Shown here one piece after another: positions 6,481 through 63,520 of a DNA stretch of 64,000 nt. Within the stretch, counting starts at the first letter, position 1. Every line of letters starts with the position of its first letter. A program made the position numbers and the translations under genes. Source of the DNA: Octopus sinensis (Eukaryota); assembly GCF_006345805.1 (NCBI RefSeq), contig NC_042999.1, positions 6,820,001 to 6,884,000 of the forward strand, written 5' to 3'. Under the pieces are notes generated by a model, which did not search any database, had not been told where the DNA came from, and was given only the letters and a program-made list of their open reading frames with translations.

Positions 6481-6779
6481 AAAAGGATGAAAGGCAACGT
6501 CGACCTCGGCGGAATTTGAATTCAGAATGTGGCAACGGGCGAAATACCTATTTCTTTACTACCCATAAGGGGCTAAGCACAGAGAGGACAAACAAGGACA
6601 GACAAACGGATTAAGTCGATTATATCGACCCCAGTGCGTAACTGGTACTTATTTAATCCCACCCCGAAAGGAGGAAAGGCGAAGTCGACCTCGGCGGAAC
6701 TTGAACTCAGAACGTAACGGCAGACGAAATACCGCTGAGCATTTCGCCCGGCGTGCTAACGATTCTGCCAGCTCGCCGT

Positions 6780-6780
<1 letters not shown>
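6481..6780 (-). mobile_element. SINE family B: head + B2 body + truncated second body
   Basis: Head GACGGCGAGCTGGCAGAATCGTTAGC; central GTCGACTTCGCCTTTCCTCCTTTCGGGG; tail AAAGAAATA joined to GGTATTTCG at 6548/6549. Confidence 0.85.
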
Positions 6781-8954: not shown

Positions 8955-9815
<861 letters not shown>

Positions 9816-10132: not shown

Positions 10133-10844
10133 CATATACTTTATACACAGCATTCTCCTTCTTTCTCTCTCACTCTTCGCCGTACCCTCTTTTTCTTTCA
10201 CTCTTCGCATTTCTCTTCACCTAATCACGTGAACACGTTACAGACGGGCTAAGTAACGGAGGAAAATAAACTTAGTCAACAAAAAAAAAAGCACGTTTCA
10301 CTCACCACATTCGTCGTCTAATACTGTTACTTCTTTTATTATCCATCAATCTATGCATCTTCTCCATTCACCATTCCTGGGAGGGTCAAAGTAGAAAAGT
10401 CCTCAACTAAAGCCTTCATTGGTTCCTAACAGAAGCAACCGTTATTAAACCTTCCGGTTGGATTCCCAAGCGTGACCGACTAAGACTATGGATACTATCT
10501 AACCATTACATTCTTGATCTACTCCTAGGTCTCTTGCCGATTGGTTCCGCTTGAAGAATCCGCCTTGTGATTCTTTCCTGCAACATTCTGATCACACTCT
10601 GTCAATATAAGAACCATCGTATCCCCATTTTCACTGGTTGCTTCAACATTGGTTTTAATAAAAGCTCATATCAAACAAGAGATCACAGCATCCCTTATCC
10701 TTTCCATCGATACAAAGTGTGTAAATGGATTGGAACGTCTTCATCCAGTTATAATCTGGATGATATCCTTCGTTCACTTCCAGCTATTTACTCTTTCCGC
10801 TACAACACTCTGCAAACACAATGTTATAATATTTCTTTCTGATC

Positions 10845-11690
10845 ATGATACAAGGCTTGCAGTTGTCAGGGGAGGGAGCTAGTCGATTACATCAATCCGA
10901 GTGCTCAATAGGTACTTATTTTATCGATCCCGAAAGGACGAAAGGCAAAGTTAACGTCGGCAACATTTGAACTCAGAACATAAAGAACCTGAGAGAGAAG
11001 TCGATGAAATAATTGTTTTGAATGCTGGCACAAGGTAGGACTTTTAGGTGGTGGGGAGGATTGTCGATAACGTCGACCCCAGTACATGACTGGTTCGTAT
11101 TCAGTTGATCTTGAAACAATGAATGGCAAAGTTGAGCTCGGTAGAATTTGAACTCAGAACACAAAGACGGACGAAATGCTGCGAAGCACTTTGTTCGGCG
11201 TGGTAATGATTCTGTCAGCTCGTCGCCCTTAGAGATAGTTAAAAAAATAATGGTTTCAAAATTTGTCTCAAGGTCAGCAGTGTCGAAAAAGGGGGAAGTA
11301 GGTTATATCGACTCCCAGAACTCAAATGGTCCTTATTTTATCGACCCCGAAAGGATGAGAGGTAAAGTCTACATCGGCAGAATTTGAACTCAGAACGAAA
11401 AGACAGACGGAATGCTGCTAATCATTTTGTCTGCCGCAGTAACGATTCTCATTTCTTTACTACCCACAAGGGGCTAAACACAGAGGGGGCAAACAAGGAC
11501 AGACAAAGGGATTAAGTCGATTATATCGACCTCAGTGCGAAACTGGTACTTTATTTATCGACCCAGAAGGGATGAAAGGCAAAGTCGACCTCGGCGGAAT
11601 TTGAACTCACAACGTAACGGCAGACGAAATACGGCTACGCATTTCGCCCTGCGTGCTAACGTTTCCGCCAGCTCGCCGCCCTTAGAGATC
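10845..11690 (-). mobile_element. Cluster of SINE family B copies (old B1 copies plus a B2 copy inserted in a B1 head)
   Basis: Repeated GGTCGATAAAATAAGTACC core; B2 copy 11450-11690 joined to AGAATCGTTA of an older B head at 11449/11450. Confidence 0.8.
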
Positions 11691-12967
11691 GATAAAATAA
11701 TGATTTTAATTTCCCGACGTATATGAAATCCCCACCAGCCTCCTCTTCACCAATTCACATCGTTCGTAAGAGAGAAAGAATTACTTTTAAAAAATATGTA
11801 ATGAAAAATAAAAATTCTTAATTGTCAGCTAAAACTTCTTCAACAGTTTTGTGTTCTGAAAATTGTTTTATTCTCAACAAAATAATGCCTATAACATGTT
11901 TCTAAAATTAAACTTCACGAATAATATTGGTAAAGCAGTTTTAAAATATTGGCGAGAGTGTTTTAATATTCATTAGATGTCGGATGCGCTATGTGTCGTC
12001 GACCTTACGTTAGCTTTATTTGAAGAGGTCATTTGTATGAGATAATGATTTCAAATTCAAAATAGATGATTCCTTCCCCTCCCCATTTATAATAGCAGAA
12101 GAACGCTATTAAAAGAACGAATATGTCAAAGGTGCCAATTCTAGTGGTGAAATTAAGTAGCCTATCATATTGCTTAGAGAATGATTATAAGATGACCACC
12201 TAGCTAAGCAAACTACTAACGTCTACTATATTATTGCACAATAACCAACACAATACCGAAATTGGTATTAATGTGTGAATGAAGTATCAAATTAATCACA
12301 GCTTGCGACTGCACATATCTCTGCTAGACGCTGCCATGTTAGCGATGCCATATTATTCAATTAGCTGCATCTCAGAACTAAGAACATGAAATAAATTTCA
12401 TGCTATTCATCTTCTTATCTTTTTTTTTCTTCTTATTGTTTTGTTTTGGTCTGTTTTATGTTTTGAGTAATTTACTCGTCGCTGCTGATGAGAAGAATTA
12501 CTGAATTAGCATCAAATAATGGTCTGGCATGAGTTTCAACAACTTTCAGAAGCCATAAACATAGAGAAAGTGCCAGATGATAGTTAGACCATTGTCGCTG
12601 ATGTCGCCACTCCTCTTTATATTATGGAATTAATTATAGTGATGAAGATAATGATATCATAATTAAATCTAATTACAATTCTCTAAGTTGAAAAACTTCC
12701 AATACTCCCAGCTGAAGAATTTATTATTCCATTTCAATCAACAGAATCGTTTTGTCAATAAGAAACCCAAATACGATTGATCCTTGAAAAATAAAATTGC
12801 TTTATTTGAAATATGTTTAATTGTTATTTTTGATGAAATGGTAAATAAGATTTAGGAACTATCTTTCGACTTGCGGATCGATTTAGACAACCAGTTGGAT
12901 GCTTATTAGATTTCGATGGCCTATTCATCTTGGTATATTTGTAAATCTATGCATGCCTTGATATTGG

Positions 12968-13449: not shown

Positions 13450-14880
13450 GTATTCCCATATTTATCTATTCAAAATGTACAAGCAAAAGTAGAAAAAAAG
13501 TGCTGAATACCTACGATAAATGTGTAAAACAAGGAAAATACGATTGATTGACAGGAATTTTTGACATCACAAAGGAAAACGGCGAATGGCTGTGCAGTGA
13601 GGATGGAAGGTTATATTATCTTCAAATTGAAAGCAAGGGACAGGTTGGGTATGCAACTAGAAAGGCAGCCAGTTCCAAAACTACCCATCCGTCCAAAAGA
13701 AGATAAGTGTCCTTAATGCCAACTTCAACCAGAGCACCCCCAGTGTCATCGTCAGCGTCTGAAGTAGAGACTGAAAGTGAATATCAAGAGTCTGAAAAAT
13801 CAGTTGAAGAATTCACACAAACAAGGAGGAAATGTAGCAAAACTGGAACTCCAACCAAGTTAGTAATATCCTCCAAGCTATCCAACTAAAAAGCAGCAAC
13901 ATTTTGTCGTCAATTATCAGAAGATGGAATCAATGTCGAGGCTCCTTCCCAATCTGGTATTTACAAATCGACCATCAAAGAAGTTGTTAAACTAAAAAAG
14001 AAAATGAAGAAAACACTACATTTAGAAAACTGGTCATTGCATTTTGATGGTAAACGTATTGATGACCAAGAATACCAAGTGCTAGTTTTAAAGAATGAAC
14101 AGAAGGAAGTTAAGTTAGAAGGACTCCAATTATCAAAGGGTAAAGCCGAGATACTGTTGTGCCAGGAATAACAGCTGTTTCAGATGAATACAATTTATTG
14201 AACTGTGTAAAGATGATTGTCGCTGATACAACAAGTGTGAACACTGGGAAAAGAGATGACATTGTCATTCAGTTGTAAAGACTGTTTGCTCAAAAGGGTT
14301 AGAAAGAACCGCAATTTATTGGTTGTCAGGATCAGATCATTGATAGAGTTCTTCGTGTTGTAATGGATAACGAACTTGGAGAAAAAGTCATCTCCCAATA
14401 TTGAATATACATTCATCCCAGAGCCTCTAAGTAATTACGAGAAACACCTGGCTAATTTCAATAATGGCGAAGAAAAGATTACTGAGTCAGCGGAACAGCG
14501 AGATGACATGAAGTTTCTATTTCATTTGACCAGAGTTTTTCATTTCTTTGAAGAAACCGGCAAATTTCCTACTGTAAAGTTTCAAAAAATATCCAACATA
14601 AGAAGTAATGCAAGATGGAATTCTCGAGCAATGCTAGCTCTTTTGGTATTTATTCTTCTGTCGATTCATCTCTTACAACTGGGTAGATTTTTGTCTTACT
14701 GACCAAATGTTCAATGCACACGGTTATCAGAAGTTATGTGGTAGGCTGCAAGTTCATAAGAAAGCATTGGACTCTGTAAAAAGACGTTTTTGGAGTCGAG
14801 AACAATCAAAGCTGTAAATTCTAAGAACAAATCAGTGCAGAACGGGCAATCAAGTGGCTTCGAGAACTTTATGATGTTTA
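13450..14880 (+). pseudogene. Degenerate DDE transposase, hAT superfamily (hATm-like)
   Basis: Across stops and frameshifts: WSLHFDGK (LHFDGK at 14037-14054), MIVADTTSVNTG (~14215-14248), FIGCQDQIIDRVL, NARWNS (~14607-14624), AERAIK (~14838-14856). Motif order matches the LHxDGK / DTTxxNTG / CxHH / ARW / AER pattern of hATm-type transposases. Confidence 0.72.
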
Positions 14881-15697
14881 TAAAAGGGAGAAACTTCAGC
14901 TTCGATTTATTTTATCTAACAAAACATATTAATTCTTTGTTTTGTTTAAAAATTTGCTTACATTCAACACCTTTTTTTATATAGTTATTTAAAATTAGAA
15001 TTAAACCCATAAAGTTAAAAATATGTTTTATTTTTAATTTTGTATCTTATCGAATGCTTGTAGTGGCATCTGTCTTAAAATAGCCTTGTTTTGAACCTTT
15101 GCATAGAGCAATTTCAAATTCAGTAATCTTAAAAATGCATAAATACACTTTTATTTCGCATCTCTCTTGAGTTTACAAGAATTTAAGCAGCGGAAATTTA
15201 GTGCCACCAAGTGATTATAATTTTAGAAGCCCATAACTCGGAAACTAATTCAACTAGAAAGCTGAAATTTCAGATATACTATTTCTGCATTGCATTGAGT
15301 CAGCACAACAAGTTTGCTAACATTTTGAGCTGGGGTTATGAAAACCCCTAGAATTTTGCATGATTTGGGTGAAAAGTGGTGATTGATTTCTTAAATTGGG
15401 GTGACGCTTTTCTCAAATAAAGCGAAATAAATGTTAGTTTTGTGACTTTTTTGAAATTTTTCATAGAATTAAAGTATAGGGTTATTAGGTTCTGAAAAAG
15501 TCATGTGCATGTGTATGTATGTATGTGTGTGTGTGTCTTTGAGTCTGTGTTTGTTACTCTACCGCTTCAAGAGAGGAATATGTATTGGGGTCGATCGATT
15601 TGTTCGACTAAAAGCTTTCAAATAGGGGCTCCAAAATGGCCGCAATCCAATAATTAAACCAGCTAAAAGAAGGAAAAGGAAGATAATGTAAATATCA

Positions 15698-16769: not shown

Positions 16770-17172
16770 GGCGCAGGTGTGGCTGTGTGGTAAGTAGCTT
16801 GCTTACCAACCATATGGTTCCGAGTTCAGTCCAACTGCGTGGCACCTTGGGCAGATGTCTTCTTCTATAGTCTCAGGCCAGCCAAAGCCTTGTAAGTGGA
16901 TTTGGTAGACAGAAACTGAAAGAAGCCCGTCGTATATATATATACATACATACATACATACATACATGTATGTATGTATGTATGTATGTATGTATGTATG
17001 TATTATGTATGTATGTATGTATGTATGTATGTATGATTGTATGTATGTATGTATGTATGTATGTATGTATGTATGTATGATTGTATGTATGTATGTATGT
17101 ATGTGTTTGTCTGTGTTTGCCCCACCACCATCGCATGACAACCGATGTTAGTGTGTTTACGTCCCCGTAACT
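16770..17172 (+). mobile_element. SINE family A, 3'-truncated, internal (TA)/(TATG)n
   Basis: GGCGCAGGTGTGGCTGTGTGG head; stops after CCCGTAACTTA. Confidence 0.85.
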
Positions 17173-18227: not shown

Positions 18228-18395
18228 AGGCGCAGGAGTGGCTATGTGGTAAGTAGCTTGCTTACGACCCACATGGTTCCGGAATCAGTCCCACTGCGTG
18301 GCTCCTTGGGCAAGTGTCTTCTACTATAGCCTCGGGCCGACCAAAGCCTTGTGAGTGGATTTGGTAGACGGAAACTGAAAGAGGCCCGTTGTATG

Positions 18396-21182: not shown

Positions 21183-21343
21183 ACTCAAAACACCCATAAT
21201 GATGATGATGATGATGATGATGATGACGATAAAGAAAACGAAAGTGAGAAATGAATCTTCTATGCCTGAGACCGGAACCTCCTTCATTTTTCAATGGCGG
21301 TGCCCCAGCATGGCCACAGCCTCAGAGATGAAACATATATAAG

Positions 21344-21757
21344 GCGGCGAGCTGGCAGAAACGTTAGCACGCCATGTGAAATGCTTTGCGGTATTTCGTC
21401 CGCTGCTGCGTTCTGAGTTCAAATTCCGCCGAGGTCGACTTTGCATTTCATCCTTTCGGGGTCGATTAAATAAGTACCAGTTACGCACTGGGGTCGATAT
21501 AATAGACTTAATCCATGTGTCTGTCCTTGTTTATCCCCTCTGTGTGTAACCCCTTGTGGGTAATAAAGAAATAGGTATTTCGTCTGTCTTTATGTTGTGA
21601 GTTCAAATTCCGCCGAGGTCGACTTTGCCTTTCATCCTTTCGGGGTCGATAAATTAAGTACCAGTTATGCACTGGGGTCGATGTAATCGACTTAATCCGT
21701 TTGTCTGTCCTTGTTTGTCCCCTCTGTATGTAGCCCGTTGTGGGTAATAAGGAAATA
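21344..21757 (+). mobile_element. SINE B array: head + 2 bodies
   Basis: Junction AAAGAAATA|GGTATTTCG at 21573/21574; second body 184 bp. Confidence 0.88.
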
Positions 21758-21929
21758 TATAAAAGAATAAGGGCACAGGTATAGTTTTATCAACAGAGGA
21801 GGGATGAAAGGCAAAGTTGTCCTTAGTGGGATTTGAACCGACAACATAAAACAGCCGAAATAAACACGACTGGGTACTTTCCGGCGTTCTACCGATTAAA
21901 CCTGTTGTCCCTGCACTAAAATTGAAAAT

Positions 21930-22510
21930 AATATTGATTTCAGGTTTTGGCCAACTATTTCGATGGTGTGGATAAGTCGATTATATCGACCCCAGTGCGT
22001 AACTGGTACTTAATTTATCGACCCCGAAAGGATGAAAGGCAAAGTCGACCTCGGTGAAATTTGAACTCACAACGTAACGGCAGACGAAATACCTATTTCT
22101 TTATTATCCACAAGGGGCTACACACAGAGGGGACAAACAAGGACAGACAAAGAGATTAAGTCGATTACATCGACCCCAGTACGCAACGGGTACTTAATTT
22201 ATCGACCTCGAAAGGGTGAAAGGCAAAGTCGACCTCGGTGAAATTTGAACTCAGAACGTAACGGCAGACGAAATACCTATTTCTTTATTACTCACAAGGG
22301 GCTACACACAGAGGGGACAAACAAGGACAGACGAAAGGATTAAGTCGATTACATCGACCCCAGTGCGTAACTGATATTTAATTAATCAACCCTGAAAGGA
22401 TAAAAGGCAAAGTCGACCTCGGCGGAATTTGATCTCAGAACGTAACGGCAGACGAAATACGGTTACGCATTTCGCCCGGTGTGCTAACGTTTCTGCTAGT
22501 TCGCCGCCCT
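21930..22510 (-). mobile_element. SINE B array: head + 2 B2 bodies + terminal B1-like body
   Basis: Junctions at 22093/22094 and 22277/22278 (184 bp apart). Confidence 0.88.
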
Positions 22511-23344
22511 AAAACAGAAAATGTATTCATCGTAAGTGAGTTAATGTTGATCAAATTATCGATCAAAATTTGATGATGGCGGCCGTAACAAGAAATACGA
22601 AGAGAGTAATAAATGATGATGATGATGATGACGATTGTGATGATTATGATGATGAGAACGATGACGACAACGACGATGATAACAATGATAACATTTCTTA
22701 AACCACAGAAAGAAAAAAACCCACATCGCTTTCAGAGGAAAATATCATCGTGTTAATCACAGTTGATCGATTAAATAAAAATGCCTTTTGAAGGGGAAAT
22801 AAAATAATTACCTAAATTAACAGATTTCAAAGGAAAAAATAAATAAAAATAATTGGGAAAATAGAAACAAAAAGAAATGAAAACCCATTGAAGACTAGGT
22901 TCGATTGAAACCCTGTCATCTAGATTATTACGGCATCAAAGATAATGGAGATTCACAACCGAATTCCACAAAGGTGCTGACAAAATAATCAAACCAAATT
23001 TAGTAAAGATCGAATGCTTGGTTTTTAGAATTACATTGTATTTTAGTTTCAATCATTGGAAATATAATTGCTTTGGCAATTATGTTCCGATTATCGTTTT
23101 TCATTATTTTACGAGAGAGGGCGCTTCTGAAGGATAGATTCAGCAAAGCGTCAGACAAATGTGCATCAAGTGAGTGATGCCTCCCCCATTTTTGTTTTTT
23201 TTCTTTGGTTACGTTTCTCAGTTCAAATACTTCGAAGGTTAATTCTTGTCTTTCATCATTCCTGGGTCGATAAAATAGTACTTGTCAATTATTAGGGACA
23301 TTTTTATCGACTGAACCTTTCCTTTAAAATTCCTGACTTGTATT

Positions 23345-23915
23345 GCGGCAAGCTGGCAGAAACGTTAGCACGCCGGGCGAGATGCTTAGTGGCATTTCGT
23401 CTGCCGCTGCGTTCTGAGTTCAAATTCCGCCCAACGTCGACTTTACCTTTCATCCTTTCCGCGTCGATAAATTAGTACCAGTTACGCACTGGGGTCGATG
23501 TAATCGACTTAATCCGTTTGTCTGTCCTTGTTTGTCTCCTCTGTGTTTAGCCCCTTGTAGGTAGTAAAGAAATAGGTATTTCGTCTGCCGCTACGTTCTG
23601 AGTTCAAATTCCGCCGAGGTCGACTTTACCTTTCATCCTTTCGGGGTCGATAAATGAAGTACCAGTTACACACTGGCGTCGATATAATCGACTTAATACG
23701 TTTGTCTGTCCTTATTTGTCCTCTCTGTGTTTAACCCCTTGTGGGCAGTAAAGAAATAGGTATTTCGTATGTCTTTATGTTCTGAGTTCAAATTCGACTT
23801 TGCCTTTCATCCTTTTGGGGTCGATAAAGTAAGTACAAGTTACATACTGGAGTTGAGCTAATCGACTGGCCCCCTCCCCACCAAAACATTTCGGGCCTTG
23901 TGCCTACAGTAGAAA
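23345..23915 (+). mobile_element. SINE B array: head + 2 B2 bodies + terminal B1 body
   Basis: Junctions at 23574/23575 and 23758/23759 (184 bp apart); last tail GGCCCCCTCCCCACC..GGGCCTTGTGCC. Confidence 0.88.
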
Positions 23916-24224
23916 AGAATAGTTTTTAATTGTGACTTAGGCAGAAATTATTTCTCTAATGTGACGGCGAGAAACAGAATATAGAAGTCTTTTATTATTC
24001 ATATTATCATTATTAATATTTGATCTTTCATTCTTTCAGGGTCGCTAAAATATTATCAGCTGTGTACTGGGGCGATGTAATCAACTTAGCCCCCCCCGAA
24101 ATTGCTGGCCTTGTGCTAAAATTTCGTTCGTGCATGCTAATTTGGTTGGCAAGTATTTTTACCTTGAGGTTTGCTGACAATAAATCTCCTCAAATCTCAA
24201 GAATCTTTCTCAGAATTCTTGCAG

Positions 24225-27867: not shown

Positions 27868-28262
27868 GAGCAGAGTGGCTGTGTGGTAAATAGCTTGCTT
27901 ACCAACCACATGGTTCCGGGTTCAGTCCCACTGCGTGGCACCCTGGGCAAGTGTCTTCTGCTATAGCCCCGGGCCGACCAATGTCTTGTGAGTGGATTTG
28001 GTAGACGGAAACTGAAAGAAGCCTGTCGTATATATATATGTATGTGTGTGTGTGCGTTTGTGTGTCTGTGTTTGTCCCCTTAGCATTGCTTGACAACCGA
28101 TGCTGGTGTGTTTACATCCCCGTAACTTAGCGGTTCGGCAAAAGAGACCGATAGAATAAGTACTGGGCTTACAAAGAATAAGTCCCGGGGTCGATTTGCT
28201 CGACTAAAGGCGGTGCTCCAGCATGGCCGCAGTCAAATGACTGAAACAAGTCAAAGAGTCAA
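27868..28262 (+). mobile_element. SINE family A, near full length
   Basis: Matches the other A copies; directly abuts a family C SINE in the opposite orientation. Confidence 0.9.
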
Positions 28263-30840: not shown

Positions 30841-31011
30841 GGCGCAGGAGTGGCTGTTTGGTAAGTAGCTTGCTAACCAACCACATGGTTTCGGGTTCAG
30901 TCCCACTGCGTGGCATCTTGGGCAAGTGTCTTCTGCTATAGCCCCGGGCCGACCAATGCCTTGTGAGTGGATTTGGTAGACGGAAACTGAAAGAAGCCTG
31001 TCGTATATATG

Positions 31012-31537: not shown

Positions 31538-33251
31538 TCTTTATATATAAAAGTGAAGTTGTGTGAGTGTCTGTCCCCTTCGATTTAGATTCCTAACTAC
31601 TCCTACATTTTGCGGTGCAGTTTAACCAGAACCGGGTATCTTATAGTCGTGATTCATATCGAGCCCTCTGGGTATTAGCGTGCGTCTACGATGAGTCTAC
31701 GATTTTAAAAATAATTTAACATCATTTTTTATTCCATTTTTAATGCATAATTTTTCGTTTGTCGATGGCGGCGGAGTTGGCGTCCATGGTCACACCTGCA
31801 CCTGTTTGCTTCTCCCCCTTCTTCCCTCCCTCATGAAGCTGTGGGGAAGGGAGTTTAAGGAAATCAACGTCGTAATGCGTTGTCAAGGAGACCAGCGTTC
31901 TTTTAGAACAACGACTTCATGGCTTGAAGACACCAAAACAAAAATGGCTAAGAAAGCCCGAATTTATAAGGGAAGTAACTCTCTAAAAATGCTTATATAA
32001 TTATTTCCCTTACAAACCCGAGCAACGCCGGGCGATACTGCTAGTCTTTATATATAAAAGTGTAGTTGTGTGTCTGTCTCCTACGATTTAGATTCCTAAC
32101 TACTCCTACATTTTGCGGTGCAGTTTAACCAGAACCGGGTATCTTATAGTCGTGATTCATATCGAGCCCTTCTGGGTATTAGCGCGCGTCTACGATGGGT
32201 CTACGATGAGTCTACGATTAAAAAAAAAAATTACCATCATTTTTTTCCATTTTAATGCATTTTTTTCGCTATTATATAAGGGAAGTAACTCTCTAAAAAT
32301 ATCTACGATGAGTCAACGATTTAAAAAAAAATTTACCATCATTTTGTTTTCCATTTTTAATGCATTTTTTTGCTAATTTTTGGCTATAACTCTCTAAAAA
32401 TGCTTATATAGTTATTTCCCTTACAAACCCGAGCAACGCCGGGCGATACTGCTAGTCTTTATATATAAAAGTGAAGTTGTGTGTCTGTCTCATACGATTT
32501 AGATTCCTAACTACTTCTACATTTTGCGGTGCAGTTTAACCAGAACCGGGTATCTTATAGTCGTGATTCATATCGAGCCCTTCTGGGTATTAGCGCGCGT
32601 CTACGATGAGTCTACGATTTAAAAAAAATTTACCATCATTTTTTTCCATTTTAATGCATTTTTTCGCTATTATATAAGGGAAGTAACTCTCTAAAAATAT
32701 CTACGATGAGTCAACGATTTAAAAAAAAATTTACCATCATTTTGTTTTCCATTTTAATGCATTTTTTTGCTAATTTTTGGCTATAACTCTCTAAAAATGC
32801 TTATATAGTTATTTCCCTTACAAACCCGAGCAACGCCGGGCGATACTGCTAGTCTTTATATATAAAAGTGAAGTTGTGTGTCTGTCTCATACGATTTAGA
32901 TTCCTAACTACTTCTACATTTTGCGGTGCAGTTTAACCAGAACCGGGTATCTTATAGTCGTGATTCATATCGAGCCCTTCTGGGTATTAGCGCGCGTCTA
33001 CGATGAGTCTACGATTTAAAAAAAAATTTACCATCATTTTTTTCCATTTTAATGCATTTTTTCGCTATTATATAAGGGAAGTAACTCTCTAAAAATGTCT
33101 ACGATGAATCAACGATTTAAAAAAATAATTACCATCATTTTTTTCCCATTTTTAATGCATTCTTTTGCTATTTTTTTGGCTATAACTCTCTAAAAATGGT
33201 TATATAGTTATTTCCCTTACAAACCCGAGCAACGACGGGCGATACTGCTAG
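31538..33251 (+). mobile_element. Four-unit head-to-tail concatemer of a non-autonomous Helitron
   Basis: Units 31538-32044, 32045-32455, 32456-32852, 32853-33251; each starts TCTTTATATATAAAAGTG and ends with a CCCGAGCAACG(C/A)CGGG hairpin then GATACTGCTAG; outer flanks A| and |T. Confidence 0.9.
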
Positions 33252-36200
33252 TTGACTATATAAAATAGTCTGGATAACTCATGTTTGCCAACATGGAAAA
33301 GTCAATCGCCTTCTACTTCAAGAGTATAATACTCAGAATTGCAGGTTCGTATTCCATTGGTTTATATGTGTTATCCAATATATTTCCTTTCGGGGTCGAT
33401 AAATAAAGCACCAGTTTCGCACTGGGGTCTATGTAATCGACTTAATCCCTTTGTCTGTCCTTGTTTGTCCCCTCTATCTTTAGCCCCTTGTGGGTAGTAA
33501 AGAAATATATATATATAATAGTCTATTAGGGCATATAAGGGAGGGTGTAGGTTCGGTTCCCACATTAGCCTATTTCCTATAGTCAGCATACAGTAAATGT
33601 TTATAATTCTATTTTCATAAATAATGAAATTCATTTTAGATATAAGTCAATATTTCATGACTTTTGTACAACTCTTATTTCTTCTTGTTTCAATTTAAGA
33701 ATTTTAATGGTCGTGTGGATAAAATATGAGTCCTTTTACGGCATAAAGAGGTTTTAGTATTGTAAAGAGCGCGGCAGAAAACTCACACATTGTGCCGCTT
33801 AGCAAACTTTTCAACTGTAAACGCACGTCGTGAACTGACATAATCAAAAACCCTATGGACCACACAAACGGTAAAACATTAACGGAGACACAGGCAACGA
33901 CACCACCCACCTACTACCTCCTCTACCATATGTGCGTCAAGGTAACAGCAATGGAAGGTTCTGTATTCGTTTAGTCTTTTAATGGTTTCAGTCACATGAC
34001 TGCAGCCATGCTGGAACACCGCTTTGATTTATTTTCTCTCAGTTCTAATGTCTCTTTATGGCTGGAAGCTGGTCTCTGATTGAGTTTGTGGCATCTGATC
34101 TTCCCTGAGTGCATCCTTGAATGGTTGGCTGGTCCCGTATCGACAATAGTTTATCCAATGATTTTGTTTTTGAATGCTTCAGCAGATGTTCGTTTTATAT
34201 TCCTGATTTCTTTCGGAAGGCAGTTGAACGGTTGAGGACCTCTAAATATCAGACTGGTACAGGAGAGCGATTTTGCTCGTGGCTTCGAAGGTGTCTACGT
34301 TTGCAAGCTGACAGTCTCTGTCTGATCGTGCATTGAAGTTCTCTGCCGCTCTTTGTAATAGGAGAGGTGTGTAGAACTTGGGTGAAAGTACTTTCCAAAT
34401 TGTATGAGTTACAAATAATTGGTAACTAAAAAAATAAAAAGACAATGGAAAGAGCTTCATTAAATGCCAGACCGTTTAACTAATGTGAAGAATAAATACG
34501 AATGATCTTAACCAATCAGTTGATCAGTCTGACATGATATCGTAAATATCAGTCCAGCCCAATAAACATGTTTTCCCCCATGCACGAATTGATATCAGCT
34601 ATTAAATATTCGATAATGGACTCATGGCCATCATCAAAGAATTTATGAGAATCGTACATAATATAAAATAAAAGAAGACGATTTAACTTTTAACGACTGC
34701 AACTTTAACAAGTGCAATAAAACGTTATTAAAACTGAAAATTGTAGAAAAGTAAGAAAAAATTATTCCAGTAAAATGAAAATAATGAAGAGGACGACTAT
34801 TAAAATTTTATGTTGAAAAATGAGCCGAGTTAATTCTTCTGGTGTTTCTGCTCAAATGATTAATCTTGTTTCAAGTCCTTTTACACGAGGGATTAAGGTT
34901 TCATTAAAGCTGAAACATACTTGCTACCTATTAAAGGCAAGAAATGTAGAATTAGAATAGGAAGATAAAGAACTATTCATAGCTTTGCATTTTATTTTGA
35001 TGTTACGAATAAACTGTCATATTGAAAGCAGCGATTGAAGTTTTAAGAAGCAAAAGAAAATGAAAAAGAATTCATATATAAAATAACAAACAAAAACGAA
35101 GAAAAACACAGCAAACGATTTGATAAAATAAATAGCAGAGAAAATGGTGGACATTTTTCTGTAAATGACAAGTCTTATCAGAGTTTAATGTTCGAACTCT
35201 ACTTTTTGTCTGTAATCGAATATCAAAATGAAACACATTATATTTGTAAAAATTAATAAAAATAAAATAACAATAACAATACTAATTTCCCAGCTTCTTT
35301 GAAATTTGGTTTAAAAAATAATATTGCATTAAAAAAACATGTTTATGGTAAAAAAATAATAAATATTACAAAAATCATGTTTTATGGTAATTTTTGCGAA
35401 TATTTTGATTTGAACGTATTTTCTTTGCTGTAGGAAAATATTTTCCTATCTTGATGAAATGAAATAAAATAAAATAGTACAGTAATGAGAGAGAAAGTGA
35501 AGAGGATAGACAAAGAGACAAAGAGACGGAGAGGGAGAGAAACAGACAGAAAGAGTGAGCCACAGAAAACGAGAGAGAGGGAGAGAGAGAGCATAATAGG
35601 ATAGAATAGTTAGTGGAAATAGATAAATAAATAGATGCATAGATAGATAAATGGATAGATAAGTAAGGTGATAGATGATTAGATAAATATATGGATAGAT
35701 AGATAGATAGATAGAGAGGTTGATTGGTAGAAGGAGAAATAGATCGAATGGATGGAAAAATTAAAATTCGAGAGAGTGGGACGGAGGTGTGTGTAGAAAT
35801 TTAATTGACACGTTTGTAGAAATGTGTTTAATTATGAATGTATGTAGGTATGTATGTATGTGTGTGTGTGTGGGGGGGGGTGAGTGAGAGAGACAGGGAG
35901 AGTAAGAAAGAGACAGGCCGAGAAAGAAGGATTAGTTATTTTAATCAAATAATTTGTGCAAGATATTCTCAAGGAATAATTTTTGAGTTTTGAAGAAATT
36001 GCGCCAGAGGAAGAATGGAATCCCTTACAACCCTCTCTGACACTAAGGAATAATCCCCAGACCAGGAGGGACCTGATTGCATGCAGTTAAATAGAGTTCG
36101 TTCAAGATACTTAGGGGCCAGTAGCTCGTGTTAAAGTAGACGCCATATTAAAATGGTGGACATGAAGCATTCTGAGAACTTCCCCAGGGTGAGTGTATAA

Positions 36201-40120: not shown

Positions 40121-40706
40121 TAAGGCGGCGAGCTGGCAGAAACGTTAGCACGCCGGGCGAAATGCGTACCCGTATTTCTGAGTTCAAATTCCGCCGAAGT
40201 CGACTTTGCCTTTCATCCTTTCGAGGTCGATAAATTAAGTACCCGTTACGCACTGGGGTCGATATAATCGACTTAATTTGTTTGTCTGTGCTTGTTTGTC
40301 CCATCTCTGTTTAGCCCCTTGTTTGTAGTAAAGAAATAGGTATTTCGTCTGCCATTACGTTCTGAGTTCAAATTCCGCCGAGGTCGACTTTGCCTTTCAT
40401 CCTTTCGTGGTCGATAATTTAAGTACCAGTTACGCACTGGAGTCGATATAATCGACTTAATCCCTGTGTCTGTCCTTGTTTGTCCCCTCTGTGTGTAGCC
40501 CCTTGTGGGTAGCAAAGAAATAGGTATTTCGTCTGCCGTTACGTTCTGAGTTCAAATTCCGCCGAGGTCGACATTGCCTTTCACCCTTTCGAGGTCGATA
40601 AATTAAGTACCCGTTACGCACTGGGGTCGATATAATCGACTTAATGCCTGTGTCTGTCCTTGTTTGTCCTCTCTGTGTGTAGCCCCTTGTGGGTAGTAAA
40701 GAAATA
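40121..40706 (+). mobile_element. SINE B array: head + 3 B2 bodies, with flanking TSD
   Basis: Junctions 40338/40339 and 40522/40523, end 40706 (184-bp period); TSD GGTGGAGTTTAGTT (40106-40119) / GGTAGAGTTTAGTT (40707-40720). Confidence 0.9.
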
Positions 40707-40769: not shown

Positions 40770-41120
40770 AATACTTTATCCTTTGTTTCAGTCATTAGAC
40801 TGTGGCCATGCTGGGGCACCGCCTTGAAGAGTTTTTAGCTGAATGCCTCGACCCTAGTATTATTGTGTTTTTGTGAAGCCTCGTACTAAATCTATCGGTG
40901 CCTTTTGCCGAAGCGATATGTCACGGGGGCGTAAACACACTAACACGGGTTGTCAAGCTGTGATGGAGGACAAACACGGACACAAAGACAGAGTCACACA
41001 CACACACACACACGCGCGCGCGCGTATGCGGCGGGCTTCTTTTAGTTTCTGCCTACCAAATCCACTCAGAAAGCTATGGTCGGCCTGAAGCTATAGTAGA
41101 AGGCATATACTCAAGGTTCC
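40770..41120 (-). mobile_element. Older, headless SINE family A copy
   Basis: Plus strand TTTCAGTCATTAGACTGTGGCCATGCTGGGGCACCGCC ... GGGCTTCTTTTAGTTTCTGCCTACCAAATCC. Confidence 0.75.
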
Positions 41121-42099: not shown

Positions 42100-45066
42100 C
42101 TTGGTTTGCCCTCAAGAGAGCAGTAAAAGCAGAAGCGATTAGGTACAGCAAAGCACTAGCCATAGATAGAAATAGAGTAGAGGGTGAGCTAGTTAAGAAG
42201 CTAGAAGAGGCAATTAGAAGCGGCATCGCATCCGACGTTTTGGCGGCGAGGTTGGCCCTCGACCAACACTTCAACGCCAAACACGAAGGATGTGCTGTCA
42301 GAGCTAGGATGCGTGCTCTAAGGAACGAAGGTGTTGGAGCCGCGAGAGAGGCCCGGTGGCAGAGGCGCAACAAGGCAACAAAGCCACCATTCGGTCCCTG
42401 GTAGATGAACAGGGGCGCGAATTGCTCGAGCCAAGTAAAATGTGTGAGGCCTTTCAGCAGCATTTTGCCCGACTGTTCGGAACGAGTGGAGGGCAAGAAC
42501 GTAGGGTGGACTTCAGTGCCTACCTACATAGCCTACCACGACTCTCGACAAGAAAGGCAGGGTGCTGCGAAGGTGCCATCACGGCGGCGGAAGTGCAGAA
42601 GCGATGGCAGAATGCTCGAGGGACAAATCACCGGGTTTGGATGGTCTAGCCTACGAGCTTTACAATTGTATGCCAGACTTGTTTGGAGATCTCTTGGCGG
42701 CGGTGTACTGCAACTGGCAGCAAAACGGGAGCATTCCTGGTTTTGTGAGCCGAGGAGCCGTAACACTGCTGAAGAAAGATCTAAACAAAGGAAATGTAAT
42801 AGATAACTTTAGGCCCATCACTCTGCTTAATGCAGACTTGAAAATTTTGGCCAAGGTGCTAGCCAAGAGGTTGGCGCTTGTCATCGAGAAACTGGTCGAC
42901 AAGGCGCAAACGTGCGCCGTGCCAGGCCGGACCATCCATGACAACCTCCATCTCATGCGCTACACCATAGACAGGGTAGTTAACGAACCTGGCATGGGTG
43001 GGGCCCTGATCAACTTGGATCAATCGAAAGCCTTTGATAGGGTAGACCATCGATACTTGGAGGCAGTCCTGAGAGCGGCTGGTTTCGGTCCCGTCTTCCG
43101 CGGCTGGATAGCTGCCTTGTACAGAGGCATCCGTTCGGTAATTCGCGTAAATGGACATCTATCGAGACCTTTCGACATTGCACGTTCGGTCCGTCAGGGA
43201 TGCCCCCTCTCGGCGCTTCTATACGTATTGACTCTTGAGCCACTACTGCGGAAGCTGGCGACTCTGAGGGGCATCCCGCGAGAATTGGGATGCGGGACGA
43301 GCGTGTCTGCATACGCGGACGACGTCACCGTCATAGTGTCTACCCACGAGCACATCGAGCTGGTCGGCGAGACACTGAAAAACTACGAAGCGGTGACAGG
43401 AGCGAAAATCAACCGGGAAAAGTCAGTGGGCTTGCGACTAGGCACCTGGAGAAGCAAGCCCATGCCGTCCACCAGCGCCTCCGTCTGGGGACGCTGGACC
43501 GACGGCCCGGTTGAGTTGCTCGGGGTCTGGTTTGGTCCGGACCTCCAAGTGGAGAAGAACTGGAACGAGATAACGAGTAGGGTGGTCACTCTCGCCCGGC
43601 AATGGGCCGAGAGGAAACTGTCCCTAAAAGGTCGAGCGGAGGTGGCGAACACGTACATCGCGTCCGTCATCTACTACCGCCTGACCGTCGTACCTTGTCC
43701 CGACCCTACCATCACCAAACTACAACGCATTCTCTTTCGCTTCTTGTGGAAAGGATGCGTCCCGATGGTCAGGCGATCCATTTGCTCTCAACACCCGTTA
43801 AAAGGAGGGCTGGGCATGCCGTGGTTGATGATGCGCAGATACGCGCTGAGACTGCGACATCTCTGGCTCTATGTAGACGACGGTGAACAGGTGTGGTCGC
43901 CGTTTGTGAGGCACGCTTTCCCGCAGCTCGTCTCCATGACCGAACTGCAGTCGTGGATCAAAAAGAGGCCGAGGAAGGGCGAATGGCACCGCGAGTGTCG
44001 CGTTGCTCTCAAGCAACTCTGCCGTCCTGGGTCGACCTTAAGTGACTTCAACACAACCATAGCATTCTATAGGGGTTTAGTGGAGGGGAGGTACGACGAC
44101 GAGCTCGGGGCGAACCTGGACGTCGACGAGGAGTACCTGACCCCCTGTTCAGGACGACTTTCGGGCCAGGGCCCATGGACAACTTCCAGAGATCCCTGGC
44201 CTGGCAGTGCTACCGAGAAGCGCTACCCGTTCGGGATAAGCTCTACAGACACGGCTCGAGAAACACGGGCCGACCTGCCCGAGGCGGTCAGAGCGACGAA
44301 ACCGTTCTGCACGCACTCGTTCAGTGTCCAACAATTTCCGACCTGTGGGCTTATGTCGAACAACTGCTGTCACGTGTGGGACGAGTCGGTTTATCAGCTG
44401 AGTCTATCGTCAATATTGTCACGCCTCCTTCCTTCAAACGGGAAGGAAGAGCTATTTTCATCATCCTTGTGGCTATGGCGAAAGAATGTATCTGGTGGAC
44501 GCGTCTGAAAGGATTGGAGACAAACACTTTCCTCTCTAGTCAATCTCTCATCAACTTCTTCAAGTACCACTTGAAAAGGAAAGTGAGAGTAGAGAGGCAA
44601 GTTTTGTCTAGCGAATGTTTTAAAAAAAGATGGGTGAATGTAGCAAGAATGGCACGTATGAATGACGAAGCCACCTTGAGCATAATCCTATGAACCCAGA
44701 AATTGAAAACAGAGATTTGCTTATTTGCAAAAAAAAAAAAAAAAAAAAAAAGAAATATAAAATGTGACTTCATTGACCGAGGTTACCGTGGTCTTTTCCG
44801 TAGGCTTTTCTTTCCACGGGTAAACCTCACCTGTCCTCCCCTTTACACTTCATATTGACATTTCTGTGATAACGATCCCTATTGATCAATTTTTTTTCCT
44901 CTCACCCCTTTTTTTAACCCCCCCTTTTTTGTCCTCTTTCTCTCCTTTTACGATCCCTTTTGATCGAAACTCCCCCCTTTCCCTTTTTTTTAAACCTTCA
45001 AAAGAAAAGCTCTACCTTGTAATTTGTTCTATCTGTGTGCAGCCCTGTGTGGCTAATAAAGAAACA
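42100..45066 (+). mobile_element. 5'-truncated Tx1/L1-clade LINE (ORF2 remnant + 3' UTR)
   Basis: RT ORF followed by a T/C-rich UTR ending CAGCCCTGTGTGGCTAATAAAGAAAC; (TCTA)n on both sides. Confidence 0.92.
42102..44693 (+). pseudogene. LINE ORF2 (linker + reverse transcriptase + C-terminal zinc knuckle), frameshifted, endonuclease missing
   Basis: KSPGLDG, NFRPITLLNADLKILAKVLAKRL, LDQSKAFDRVDH, VRQGCPLS, AYADDV, LGVWF, ETVLHALVQC; frame changes near 42356, 42590, 44140 and 44270. Confidence 0.92.
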
Positions 45067-48413: not shown

Positions 48414-49110
48414 GATGAAGGTGAGAGTAGAGAGGGAAGTTTTGTCTTGTGAATGTTTCAGAAAAGATGGGTGAATGTAGCAAGGATACCTATTTCTTTA
48501 TTACCCACAAGGGGCTAAACACAGAGGGGACAAACAAGGACAGACATAGGTATTAAGTCGATTACATCGACTCCAGTGCGTAACTGGTACTTAATTTATC
48601 GACCCCGAAAGGATGAAAGGCAAAGTCGACCTCGGTGGAATTTGAACTCACAACGTAACGCAAACGAAATACCGCTAAGCATTTCGCCCGGCGTTCTAAC
48701 GTTTCTGCTAGCTCGCCGCCTTTGTAGCAAGGATACCACGTGAGAATGACGGAGCCAGTTTGAACATAATCCTATGAACAAAAAGAAAAAAAAAACGAAA
48801 GGAAAAAAGAAACCCACTTACTGTAATGTGTTTTCCTTTTGAATGACTCTATTGCCCAAGGTTCCCGTAGTCTTTTCCGTAGGCTTTTCTATCCACGGAC
48901 AAACCTAATCTGTTTTCCCTTTTTACATTGACATTTCTATGATACACGATCCCTATTGATCGTCCCCACCTTTTTTCTTTTTTTTTCACGAATCCTTTTC
49001 ATCGGATTTCGACCCCTTTTTTTCTTCCCCTCTTCTTCCCAAGAAGAAAAGCTCTACTTTGTATTTTGTCCCGTCCGTGTTCAGCCCTGCGTGGCCAATA
49101 AAGAAATCTA
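48414..49110 (+). mobile_element. Second, diverged Tx1-like LINE 3' end, interrupted by a SINE B2
   Basis: Aligns to 44575-45066 (KVRVER.V..ECF..RWVNVAR and UTR); ends CAGCCCTGCGTGGCCAATAAAGAAATCTA. Confidence 0.85.
48491..48722 (-). mobile_element. Full-length monomeric SINE B2 with 15-bp TSD
   Basis: TGTAGCAAGGATACC at 48476-48490 and 48723-48737. Confidence 0.93.
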
Positions 49111-54884: not shown

Positions 54885-55700
54885 TTTTCTACTCTAGGCA
54901 CAAGGCCCGAAATCTTTTTGGGGAAGGCCAGTCAATTAGATCTAGCCCAGTACGCAATTGGTACTTAATTTATCGTGCCCGAAAGGATGAAAAGCAAAGA
55001 AGACCTCGGCGGAATTTGAACTCAGAATGTAAAGACAGTCGAAATACCTATTTCTTTATTACCCACAAGGGGCTAACACAGAGGGGACAAACAAGGACAG
55101 ACATAGGTATTAAGTCGATTACATCGACCCCAGTGCGTAACTGGTACTTAATTTATCGACCCCGAAAGGATGAAAGGCAAAGTCGACCTCGGCGGAATTT
55201 GAACTCGGAACGTAACGACAGACGAAATACCGCTAAGCATTTCGCCCGGCGTGCTAACGATTCTGCTAGTTCGCCGCTAACGCTTCTCTCCTACTCTAGG
55301 CACAAAGCCCGAAATTTTTGGGGAGGGGGCCAGTAGATTAAACCGACTCTAGTACGCAACTGGTACTTAATTTATCGATCCCGAAAGGATGAAAGGCGAA
55401 GTGGACTTCGGCGGAATTTGAACTCAGAACGTGAAGACAGACAAAAATATCGCTAAGCATTTCGTCCAGCGTGCTAACGTTTCTTATTTCTTTACTGCCC
55501 CCAAGGGGCTACACACAGAGGCGACAAACAAGGACAGACAAACGGATTAAGTGCGTAACTGGTACGTTTTTAATCGACTTCGAAAAGATGATCGGCAAAG
55601 TCGACCTCGGCGGAATTTGAACTCAGAACGTAGCGGCAGACGAAATACGACTACGTATTTCGCCCGGCGTGCTAACGCTTCTGGCAGCTCGCCGCCTCAA
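54885..55700 (-). mobile_element. Two composite SINE B arrays (B2 inserted into B1)
   Basis: Junctions AAAGAAATA|GGTATTTCG at 55048/55049 and AAAGAAATA|AGAAACGTT at 55484/55485; terminal bodies carry B1 tails. Confidence 0.85.
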
Positions 55701-59629: not shown

Positions 59630-59631
<2 letters not shown>

Positions 59632-59807
59632 TTTTTTCCTCTCCCCCTTTTTAACTCCCCCCTTTTTTTGTCCTCTTTCTCTCCTTTTACGATCCCTTTT
59701 GATCGAAACTCCCCCTCCTTTTTTTTTTTTTTTAAACCTTCAAAAGAAAAGCTCTACCTTGTATTTGTTCTATCTGTGTGCAGCCCTGTGTGGCTAATAA
59801 AGAAACA

Positions 59808-63283: not shown

Positions 63284-63520
63284 TATTTCTTTACTGCCCA
63301 CAAGGGGACAAACAAGGACAGACAAACGGATTAAGTCGATTACATCGACCCCAGTGCGTAACTGGTACTTATTTAATCGACCCCGAAAGGATGAAAGGCA
63401 AAGTCGACCTCGGCAGAATTTGAACTCAGAACGTAGCGGCAGACGAAATACTGCTGAGCATTTCGCCCGACCTGCTAACCTTTCTGCCAGTTCGCCGCCC
63501 TTCTGCCAGTTCACCGCCCT
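63284..63520 (-). mobile_element. SINE B2 with reiterated 5' end
   Basis: B2 body plus head; head start repeated at 63482-63533. Confidence 0.85.

What the first reader, a model, noticed from the sequence alone, without database searches (positions are those of the whole stretch)
21344..23915. SINE B2 builds one-head, multi-body arrays by inserting into its own family
Seen: arrays at 6481, 21344, 21930, 23345, 40121 and 54885 have one head followed by bodies with an exact 184-bp period, always joined AAAGAAATA|GGTATTTCG (9 junctions). Two more B2 copies join a B head at |AGAAAC or |AGAATC (55484, 11449). In three arrays the last body has the older B1 tail. Non-family targets also begin GGTAT, GGTAG or AGAAAC (48490, 62125, 40706, 63283). 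Inference: the endonuclease prefers RGWA, which occurs twice in the SINE head; after TPRT the cDNA anneals to the homologous target strand, so no second head appears. This is a self-targeting route from SINE to tandem repeat.
Basis: partly seen in the sequence, partly recalled or inferred. Interest (0 to 1): 0.78.

Follow-up and report, generated by a model that had tools for sequence, protein, structure and literature searches.

The report
Self-targeting SINE builds one-head tandem arrays
In this octopod-like genome a 232-bp SINE has repeatedly gained extra 184-bp bodies at one exact spot in its own head; repeated insertion into resident copies is the best but unproven explanation, and it offers a transposition-driven route from dispersed to tandem repeats.

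Summary
The 18-mer AAAGAAATAGGTATTTCG occurs 9 times (0 expected) in six arrays, each with one 48-nt head followed by 184-nt bodies. Two more copies join a relative's head at AGAAWC.

New anatomy:
- The unit boundary lies at the 3' edge of the tetraloop of a conserved 12-bp hairpin.
- The SINE's last ~45 nt match an L1-like LINE in the window. That LINE sits inside a (CTAT)n microsatellite.

Evidence for insertion into resident copies:
- Units within an array are no more alike than units from different arrays, so local duplication is excluded.
- Whole arrays are flanked by a single target-site duplication.
- The upstream partner always has the young 'B2' tail, and older-type units are always downstream (5/5).
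- 3 of 7 non-family insertions have duplications starting GGTA, and a paralogous empty site confirms this is target DNA.
- All 9 internal units start with G49, against 1 of 6 solo copies.

Weak points:
- GGTA/RGWA alone is far too loose a target.
- 'Last body oldest' fails among the B2 units.
- The homology-based loss of the second head is inference.
- No further genome sequence could be retrieved.

One-event template switching and multimeric source genes remain rivals. One-head SINE arrays are already described in clams and squamates.

The parts
21342..21757 (+). Array: head 21342-21389, body 21390-21573, body 21574-21757. The second body has a B1-like 5' region and a B2 tail.
   Evidence: junction 18-mer at 21565-21582
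21930..22509 (-). Array: head 22509-22462, body 22461-22278, body 22277-22094, last unit 22093-21930. The last unit has a B2-like core and an old-type tail. The array is flanked by the duplication ATTTTC..TTTTA.
23343..23922 (+). Array: head 23343-23390, body 23391-23574, body 23575-23758, last unit 23759-~23922. The last unit is B1-type and more decayed.
6482..6780 (-). Array: head 6780-6733, body 6732-6549, 67-nt fragment of an older-type body 6548-6482. It lies inside an (ATT)n microsatellite.
40123..40706 (+). Array: head 40123-40170 and three B2 bodies (40171-40338 with a 16-nt deletion, 40339-40522, 40523-40706). One 14-nt duplication GGT[G/A]GAGTTTAGTT flanks the whole array.
54885..55696 (-). 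Four-unit composite inside one 20-nt duplication (2 mismatches). It comprises a full B2 55696-55485, a B1 lacking its first ~15 nt 55484-~55280, a head plus B2 body 55279-55049, and a B1-type body plus tail 55048-54885.
11262..11680 (-). Full B2 (11680-11451) joined at AAAGAAATG|AGAATC to an old-family copy lacking its first ~15 nt (11449-~11262).
48491..48720 (-). Solo B2 with a perfect 15-nt duplication GGTATCCTTGCTACA. It is inserted in a LINE fragment, and the paralogous empty site is at 44600-44700.
42102..45064 (+). 5'-truncated L1-like LINE (RVT_1 and zf-RVT). Its last ~42 nt (45023-45064) match the B2 tail. It is embedded in (CTAT)n on both sides and is the probable partner family.
59631..59805 (+). 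175-nt 3' fragment of the same LINE family, also inside (TATC)n.
23375..23402 (+). Example of the head hairpin (consensus 33-60): 12-bp stem and 4-nt loop. The body begins at the first base of the 3' strand.

Best explanation
The element is a 232-nt SINE with a 48-nt head and a 184-nt body. The last ~45 nt of the body are shared with an L1-like LINE present in the window.

Proposed mechanism: new B2 copies were repeatedly inserted by target-primed reverse transcription into resident family members at one exact bond, between nt 48 and 49. There the resident reads GGTATTTCG, just 3' of the tetraloop of a conserved 12-bp hairpin. A minor site is AGAAWC at nt 16. Because the DNA upstream of the nick is itself a SINE head, the 5' end of the new cDNA is resolved on that homologous sequence instead of being joined with a duplication. 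Each hit therefore adds one 184-nt body and no second head.

Shown:
- the precise, recurrent junction
- the unrelatedness of neighbouring units
- a single duplication around whole arrays
- the young-upstream, old-downstream order of subfamilies
- the same GGTA start in duplications at non-family sites
- the requirement for G49/T51 in the hit copy
- a partner LINE family with sequence-biased (TAT[C/T]) insertion sites

Inferred:
- that the nick is made by the partner's endonuclease
- what gives the extra specificity beyond GGTAT (a longer motif, the inverted repeat, or RNA/DNA homology)
- the homology-dependent 5' resolution
- that growth is mostly at the head-proximal site
For: 1. Recurrence and precision. 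There are 9 identical junction 18-mers against 0 expected. All 9 units that start at position 49 are preceded by a B2 tail.

2. The junctions formed independently. Downstream units belong to at least four types: two B1-like forms, a unit with an old-type tail, an early B2, and B2.

3. There was no local duplication. Within-array identity is 90.7% against 89.8% between arrays, and rare shared variants give p = 0.09.

4. Polarity. In 5 of 5 mixed junctions the B2 tail is upstream and the older family downstream (P ~0.03). B1-type last units are about 81-84% identical to each other, against about 90% for B2 units.

5. Target motif outside the family. 3 of 7 non-family 3' flanks start GGTA (P ~7e-7). 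GGT lies inside verified duplications (15/15 at 48490; 13/14 at 40121). A paralogous LINE copy supplies the empty site.

6. Site requirement.
- Internal units start with G in 9/9, against 5/12 head-attached units (Fisher p = 0.007).
- Array sites are G in 13/15, against 1/6 solos (p = 0.006).
- Old copies reading AGCAT or GGCAT at this site were never hit there.

7. Partner LINE.
- It shares its 3' end with the SINE.
- Its RT is closest to human L1 ORF2p among solved structures (E 1.6e-37).
- Full-length relatives carry an APE-type endonuclease.
- Two of its three copies sit inside (CTAT)n.
- In Argonauta hians the related LINE and SINEs share the tail, and one duplication begins CTAT.
Against: - No 'two-head' product and no internal target-site duplication is seen in 11 family junctions, so the homology resolution would have to be nearly 100% efficient.
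- GGTAT alone cannot explain the bias towards family copies (18 sites inside, 85 outside). The GGTA at consensus position 218 is never used.
- Two arrays (21930, 40121) have heads of the G44-C49 type. That type lacks the GG target and matches its own first body. This fits 'head and first body come from one RNA' unless the heteroduplex is co-converted.
- Among B2 units the head-proximal body is never the least diverged. The last unit of array 21930 is the least diverged.
- Only 1 of 4 mixed junctions (55048) shows the expected ~15-nt carry-over of resident sequence into the new body.
- The sample is one 64-kb window with 18 B2 3' ends.
Confidence: 0.5

Rival explanations
1. One-event template switching. 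During a single retrotransposition the reverse transcriptase, having copied a SINE RNA down to nt 49 (or nt 16), moves to the 3' end of another B2 RNA and continues. It copies a head only on the last template. The array is born whole.
For: - A single duplication surrounds whole arrays, including the four-unit composite at 54885-55696.
- Head and first body have matching hairpin types in 6 of 6 arrays.
- B2 units within an array have similar divergence.
- The 19-nt triple partial head at 63479-63533 is what re-alignment of a reverse transcriptase at the RNA 5' end (AAGG microhomology) would give.
- Mosaic units exist: a B1-like 5' region with a B2 tail, and a B2 core with an old tail.
Against: - It does not explain why genomic target duplications at non-family sites start with the same GGTA motif as the supposed RNA switch point.
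- It does not explain why the first-copied unit so often has a non-B2 tail while every later template has a B2 tail (5/5 polarity).
- It does not explain why only G49 templates switch (9/9), although about half of the heads are C49.
- No solo copy or array ends headless at nt 49, and there is no microhomology between acceptor and donor at the junction.
Confidence: 0.2
2. Multimeric source genes. A junction formed once or a few times, and head-plus-several-body elements are then transcribed from the single head promoter and retrotransposed as units. The GGTAT in targets would reflect pairing with the downstream GGUAU carried in array transcripts.
For: - One duplication surrounds each array, and there are no TTTT terminators in the consensus body.
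- The junction 18-mer is invariant in 9/9 although units differ by about 5% from the consensus (P ~0.02 even at the low local rate).
- Arrays are as common as solos (6 and 6).
- Array 6481 ends at CATCCTTTT, a possible Pol III stop.
Against: - Arrays differ in number and type of units, and their last units belong to at least three families, so several independent junction formations are still needed.
- There is no position-specific similarity between arrays.
- Array units and solos do not form separate clusters: solo 48490 is 97.3% identical to the first body of array 54885.
Confidence: 0.13
3. Post-insertion tandem duplication of the body by unequal crossing-over or replication slippage. This is the default explanation in the literature on SINE arrays.
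For: - Proposed for clam and squamate SINE arrays (PMC11481361, PMC10702118).
- Units 2 and 3 of array 40121 are 94.6% identical, and two neighbours in array 21930 share a rare double variant.
Against: - Neighbours are on average as different as random units.
- Different subfamilies sit in one array.
- The repeat unit ends exactly at the SINE's 3' end in all nine junctions. Slippage would not hit the same bond repeatedly.
Confidence: 0.04
4. Rolling-circle copying of a circular 184-nt RNA or DNA intermediate.
For: - The period is exact and the junction constant.
Against: - Units of one array would be identical at birth and of one subfamily. Instead they are about 10% different and often of different families.
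Confidence: 0.02

Closest known systems
TSD1-(SINE)n-TSD1 arrays of tRNA-derived SINEs in the blood clam Scapharca broughtonii (Mob DNA 2024, PMC11481361)
   Same: Both have one complete head, several head-truncated repeats, and one target-site duplication around the whole array. Both are in molluscs.
   Different: - In the clam the inner units are also truncated in the 3' tail and are highly similar, and unequal recombination was proposed.
- Here every unit runs to the exact 3' end of the SINE.
- Here units are unrelated and of mixed subfamilies, and arrays are short (2-3 units).
SINE-derived satellites of squamate reptiles (Vassetzky et al. 2023, PMC10702118)
   Same: Both are tandem repeats of part of a SINE, with a longer terminal unit that reaches the SINE terminus. 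In both, independent origin at many loci suggests a non-random process.
   Different: - The squamate arrays reach up to ~1000 units, become homogenised and are subtelomeric.
- No specific junction-forming mechanism was shown for them.
- Here the arrays are at an early stage and are not homogenised.
Double-insertion model for tandem transposable elements (McGurk and Barbash 2018, PMC5932611; R1 in rDNA)
   Same: In both, insertion-site preference makes a second copy land at the same site as a first, giving head-to-tail tandems that can seed satellites.
   Different: - In that model the target lies outside the element, and whole elements are separated by the duplicated target. The old-family cluster at 10840-11720 looks like that.
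- Here the target lies inside the element, no duplication separates the units, and the head is not repeated.
Sequence-specific L1/Tx1-type and R-type LINEs (own knowledge: Tx1L in Tx1D, microsatellite-specific Kibi/Koshi, Dong in (TAA)n, R1/R2 in rDNA)
   Same: Both have a partner LINE with sequence-biased insertion. Here the copies sit in (CTAT)n and the duplications start CTAT or GGTAT.
   Different: - The clade and endonuclease of the LINE copy here are not determined, because the copy is 5'-truncated.
- The specificity is partial: 7 of 18 B2 ends lie outside the family.
Dimeric and multimeric SINEs (own knowledge: Alu; also the Dip/B1 multimers of jerboa cited in PMC10702118)
   Same: Both involve several SINE-derived modules in tandem.
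   Different: Those amplify with a fixed architecture or are chains of full-length elements. Here the number of bodies varies and only the first has a head.
Microhomology-mediated 5' end joining of L1 insertions (own knowledge)
   Same: This is the proposed way in which the new cDNA is attached upstream.
   Different: Here the homology would be tens of nucleotides of SINE head or body rather than 1-3 nt. It has not been demonstrated.

Membership tests
SINE (LINE-dependent non-autonomous retroposon) | Short, non-coding, dispersed, many diverged copies | tested here: met
   The consensus is 232 nt. About 40 hits cover 9.6% of the window.
SINE (LINE-dependent non-autonomous retroposon) | Flanked by target-site duplications | tested here: met
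   Duplications of 13-20 nt occur at 48490, 40121, 21930 and 54885-55696. An empty paralogous site was found.
SINE (LINE-dependent non-autonomous retroposon) | 3' end shared with a LINE | tested here: met
   Consensus positions 189-231 match the 3' ends of the RT-encoding element at 42102-45064 and of two further fragments. The same holds in Argonauta locus L002.
SINE (LINE-dependent non-autonomous retroposon) | Head derived from a small RNA (tRNA, 5S or 7SL) with an internal Pol III promoter | tested here: inconclusive
   ARAGORN finds no tRNA, and Rfam gives no match at E <= 1. Only a B-box-like GAGTTCAAATTCC was seen by eye, and it lies in the body, not the head.
Tandem elements formed by double insertion | Neighbouring copies are independent insertions, not duplicates | tested here: met
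Tandem elements formed by double insertion | The duplicated target is preserved between the tandem copies | tested here: not met
   No duplication separates B2 bodies, and only GGTATTTCG is common to successive units. The feature is met by the old-family cluster at 10840-11720.
SINE-derived satellite / one-head SINE array | Tandem repeats of part of a SINE with a longer terminal unit, inside one duplication | tested here: met
SINE-derived satellite / one-head SINE array | Long, homogenised arrays | tested here: not met
   There are at most three bodies, with about 90% identity between neighbours.
Multimeric SINE amplified as a unit | Fixed number and order of modules, with position-specific diagnostic differences | tested here: not met
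   Arrays have 1-3 bodies of varying type, and there is no position-specific similarity. The sample is small.
Sequence-specific LINE/SINE pair | Insertions concentrated in one defined sequence | tested here: inconclusive
   11 of 18 B2 3' ends are at two family sites, 3 of 7 others start GGTA, and the LINE copies sit in (CTAT)n. Too few events are available to draw a logo.
Sequence-specific LINE/SINE pair | Endonuclease with demonstrated sequence or structure specificity | not testable with these tools
   The LINE copy lacks its 5' part. Relatives P0005 and P0011 have an APE-type domain.

The most novel reading that the evidence does not exclude
The SINE is a self-homing retroposon. Its partner's endonuclease recognises the loop/stem edge of the inverted repeat in the SINE's own head, which reads GGTATTTCG and arose from ancestral GGCAT by a C-to-T change. 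Each hit is completed by long-homology annealing of the cDNA. Transposition itself therefore converts a dispersed SINE, body by body, into a tandem repeat with no recombination step. This would be a defined molecular route from SINE to satellite.
Probability: 0.3. Interest if true: 0.7.

Novelty: new variant of a known kind. Interest (0 to 1): 0.5.

Why it matters
How dispersed elements turn into tandem repeats is an open question. One-head SINE arrays have been reported in clams and squamates without a demonstrated mechanism.

This window gives unusually clean clues. There is an exact junction at the element's 3' end, units of mixed age in a fixed order, a matching target motif outside the family, and a candidate partner LINE. 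Together these make a transposition-driven mechanism testable genome-wide and in a retrotransposition assay.

There is also a practical consequence for annotation. Arrays and mosaic units of this kind inflate the number of apparent SINE 'families'. For example, 893 unclassified SINE families are listed among the recently active elements of Octopus vulgaris (PMC13282606).

Tried and rejected
- **More copies from the same genome.** Exact-pattern scans of metagenome, prokaryote-genome and viral collections found nothing. A protein search with a SINE-encoded ORF found nothing. The LINE protein search gave only relatives of 72% identity or less from other cephalopods. All statistics therefore rest on one window.
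- **Head as old as the last body?** Array heads (89-96% to consensus) are indistinguishable from solo B2 heads, and also from the two B1 heads available. The test is inconclusive.
- **tRNA origin of the head.** There was no hit with ARAGORN or Rfam.
- **Microhomology between the tail and the junction.** None would explain priming or switching. The weak GAAATA/TATTTC pairing at the junction is not significant.
- **Rolling circle and local duplication.** Both are rejected on unit heterogeneity.
- **Assembly artefact.** Rejected, because units within an array differ by about 10% and arrays have unique flanks with duplications.
- **The four-unit composite at 54885-55696.** It can be read either as nested hits (a B1 landing in the A-rich tail of another B1, then two B2 hits) or as serial template jumps. 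It does not discriminate between them.
Full report
**What the window is.** The sequence is eukaryotic, AT-rich (28-54% GC per 2-kb window; about 30-43% outside the LINE) and full of microsatellites. An RT-encoding LINE in it has its best database matches in cephalopods: Argonauta hians at 64% identity, and also Acanthosepion pharaonis. The source is therefore an octopod-like cephalopod, but the species could not be named. They are not the rodent elements.

**Checking the observation.**
- TRF reports 184-bp periods at four of the six places.
- BLAST and a profile HMM built from ten copies map about 40 family fragments, covering 9.6% of the window.
- The consensus is 232 nt.
- Every unit that starts at consensus position 49 (nine of them) is immediately preceded by a complete B2 tail.
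- Each of the six arrays has exactly one head, at positions 1-48.
- The junction 18-mer AAAGAAATAGGTATTTCG occurs nine times without a mismatch, and never in 100 shuffles.
- Two further B2 copies abut position 16 of an older relative, reading AAAGAAATA|AGAAAC at 55485/55484 and AAAGAAATG|AGAATC at 11451/11449.

Only arrays 23345 and 54885 end in the B1 tail. Array 21930 ends in another old-type tail on a young-looking core. Array 6481 ends in a 67-nt fragment cut by (ATT)n. The 'non-family' AGAAAC target at 63283 may be a decayed family remnant.

**Anatomy not noted before.**

1. The boundary 48|49 is the 3' edge of the tetraloop of a 12-bp hairpin, GGGCGAAAUGCU-UAGC-GGUAUUUCGUCU.
- It folds at -14.1 kcal/mol, with a z-score of -4.9.
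- Across 15 young and old heads, 91.7% of cells pair, against 37-56% when the partner is slid.
- The closing pair 44-49 is always paired, as U-G, G-C or U-A.
- The repeated body thus begins with the 3' strand of this stem.

2. Older relatives read AGCAT or GGCAT where B2 reads GGTAT.

3. The last ~42 nt of B2 match the 3' end of a 5'-truncated LINE at 42102-45064, which has RVT_1 and zf-RVT domains.
- Its RT is closest to human L1 ORF2p among solved structures (E 1.6e-37).
- Full-length relatives carry an APE-type endonuclease.
- This LINE, and a 175-nt fragment of the same family at 59631-59805, are embedded in (CTAT)n on both sides.
- A third copy (48417-49107) ends GAAATCTATTTC.
- In a 22-kb Argonauta locus the related LINE and several SINEs share the tail ..GGCCCTTGTGGCTAATAGAGAAATCTAT, and one duplication starts CTATTTC.
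- The partner machinery therefore has a sequence bias with a TAT[C/T] core.

**Local duplication is excluded.** Mean identity of bodies within an array is 90.7% (six pairs), against 89.8% +/- 1.9 between arrays. Rare shared variants are only weakly enriched (permutation p = 0.09). Units of different subfamilies sit in the same array. Rolling-circle copying is excluded for the same reason.

**Arrays lie inside single target-site duplications.**
- Array 40121: GGT[G/A]GAGTTTAGTT (14 nt).
- Array 21930: ATTTTC..TTTTA (13 nt, 2 mismatches).
- The four-unit composite 54885-55696: 20 nt with 2 mismatches.
- Solo 48490: a perfect 15-nt duplication, GGTATCCTTGCTACA. A paralogous LINE copy at 44600-44700 shows the uninterrupted site.

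GGT(AT) is therefore target DNA, not part of the tail.

**Evidence favouring insertion into resident copies.**
- Three of seven non-family 3' flanks start GGTA (P ~7e-7). This is the same motif as at position 49 of the SINE.
- In all five junctions between different families the B2 tail is upstream and the older family downstream (P ~0.03). No B1 or old-type tail is ever followed by position 49 or 16.
- B1-type last units are about twice as diverged as B2 units: about 82% pairwise identity against about 90%.
- The hit site must read GG. Internal units start with G in 9/9, head-attached units in 5/12 (p = 0.007), and solos in only 1/6 (array sites against solos, p = 0.006).
- None of the copies reading CGTAT, AGCAT or GGCAT was hit at this site.

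A template-switch model would have to explain why genomic target duplications mimic an RNA switch point. It would also have to explain why only B2 RNAs are acceptors, and why only G49 donors switch.

- RGWA is too loose. The consensus has six such sites, including a second GGTA at position 218, but use is 9, 2, 0, 0, 0, 0.
- GGTAT is about five times commoner outside the family (85 sites against 18), yet 9 of 11 GGTAT-type junctions are inside it (P ~6e-6). Some further determinant is needed. It could be the full GGTATTTCG (0 copies outside the family), the inverted repeat, or homology.
- 'Last body oldest' is true only for B1-type units. Among B2 units the first body always has the most differences from the consensus. 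The last unit of array 21930 has the fewest (3/121, P ~0.02). Divergence from a consensus is an imperfect clock if diverged copies also serve as sources.
- Two arrays have G44-C49 heads, which lack the GG target. This is easier to explain if head and first body come from one RNA, unless the heteroduplex in the head is co-converted.
- No two-head or duplication-bearing product is present among the 11 family junctions.
- The test of whether the head is as old as the last body had no power.

**Rivals.**
- One-event template switching (0.2). It is supported by the single duplications, the matching hairpin types of head and first body, the mosaic units, and a 19-nt triple partial head at 63479-63533 that looks like RT re-alignment.
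- Multimeric source genes (0.13). They would explain the invariant junction and the equal numbers of arrays and solos. They still need several independent junction formations, because the last units belong to at least three families.
- Unequal crossing-over (0.04) and rolling circle (0.02) are largely refuted.

**Comparison with what is known.**
- One-head SINE arrays inside one duplication are described in the clam Scapharca broughtonii (PMC11481361).
- SINE-derived satellites with a longer terminal unit are described in squamates (PMC10702118). Unequal recombination or repeated insertion was suggested there but not shown.
- The double-insertion model (PMC5932611) is the closest mechanism. 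It places the target outside the element and leaves a duplication between whole copies, a pattern seen here in the old-family cluster at 10840-11720.
- The present case differs in three ways. The target lies inside the element, units end exactly at the SINE's 3' end, and only bodies are repeated.
- I therefore rate it a new variant of a known kind.

**Verdict.** Interest is 0.5. Genome-wide junction logos, a search for intermediates, and comparison of orthologous loci would decide between the models.

Noticed in passing
window 42102-45064 (also 48417-49107 and 59631-59805): L1-like LINE, 5'-truncated, with RVT_1 and zf-RVT domains. Its 3' end matches the B2 SINE tail. Two of the three copies lie inside (CTAT)n microsatellites on both sides, suggesting a microsatellite-targeting or microsatellite-tailed LINE family.
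   Followed up: partly
window 10840-11720 (- strand): Old-family SINE copies only about 70% identical to each other are separated by three copies of the same ~25-nt spacer (..ATTATTT..ATCGAYCTCTCTMAGG). This is a TSD-(SINE-TSD)n pattern, as expected from repeated insertion at one regenerated site.
   Followed up: partly
window 63479-63533 (- strand): The 5' end of the B2 copy at 63284-63499 carries three partial heads with a 19-nt period, each ending AAGG or TAGG. This is compatible with the reverse transcriptase re-aligning at the RNA 5' end, or with a multi-head intermediate of insertion at position 16.
   Followed up: partly
nine junctions (6540, 21565, 22085, 22269, 23566, 23750, 40330, 40514, 55040): The 18-nt junction is invariant in 9/9 although units differ by about 5% from the consensus. 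It includes a CpG. P is about 0.02 even at the low local substitution rate. Possible causes are constraint, recent origin or low mutability.
   Followed up: partly
window 21973-22093 versus 21930-21972 (- strand): The last unit of array 21930 combines the least-diverged core in the window (3/121 differences) with a decayed, partly deleted old-type tail. It is either a mosaic (recombinant or converted) unit or a member of an unsampled subfamily.
   Followed up: no
window 31976-33252: A 397-bp tandem repeat of 3.2 copies at 96% identity, with an internal ~100-bp sub-repeat. It is unrelated to the SINE. A 5'-truncated B2 lies just downstream (33385-33507).
   Followed up: no
window 41025-41105 and at least 10 other places (e.g. 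940-1020, 9036-9115, 16841-16936, 18304-18388, 27952-28032, 30927-31007, 50732-50812): An ~81-bp dispersed repeat (78-84% identity) that usually adjoins TA/CA-type microsatellites. It may be another short retroposon or a microsatellite-associated element.
   Followed up: no
locus L002 (Argonauta hians) 14878-15310 and 1474-1800: The Argonauta SINEs that share the LINE tail also occur as a head-to-tail pair of full-length copies, and as a truncated-tail-to-head junction. Tandem arrangement of these SINEs may therefore be general in octopods.
   Followed up: no
window 21342-24092: Seven family elements, including three arrays in both orientations, are packed into 2.8 kb. This indicates strong local clustering of insertions.
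   Followed up: no
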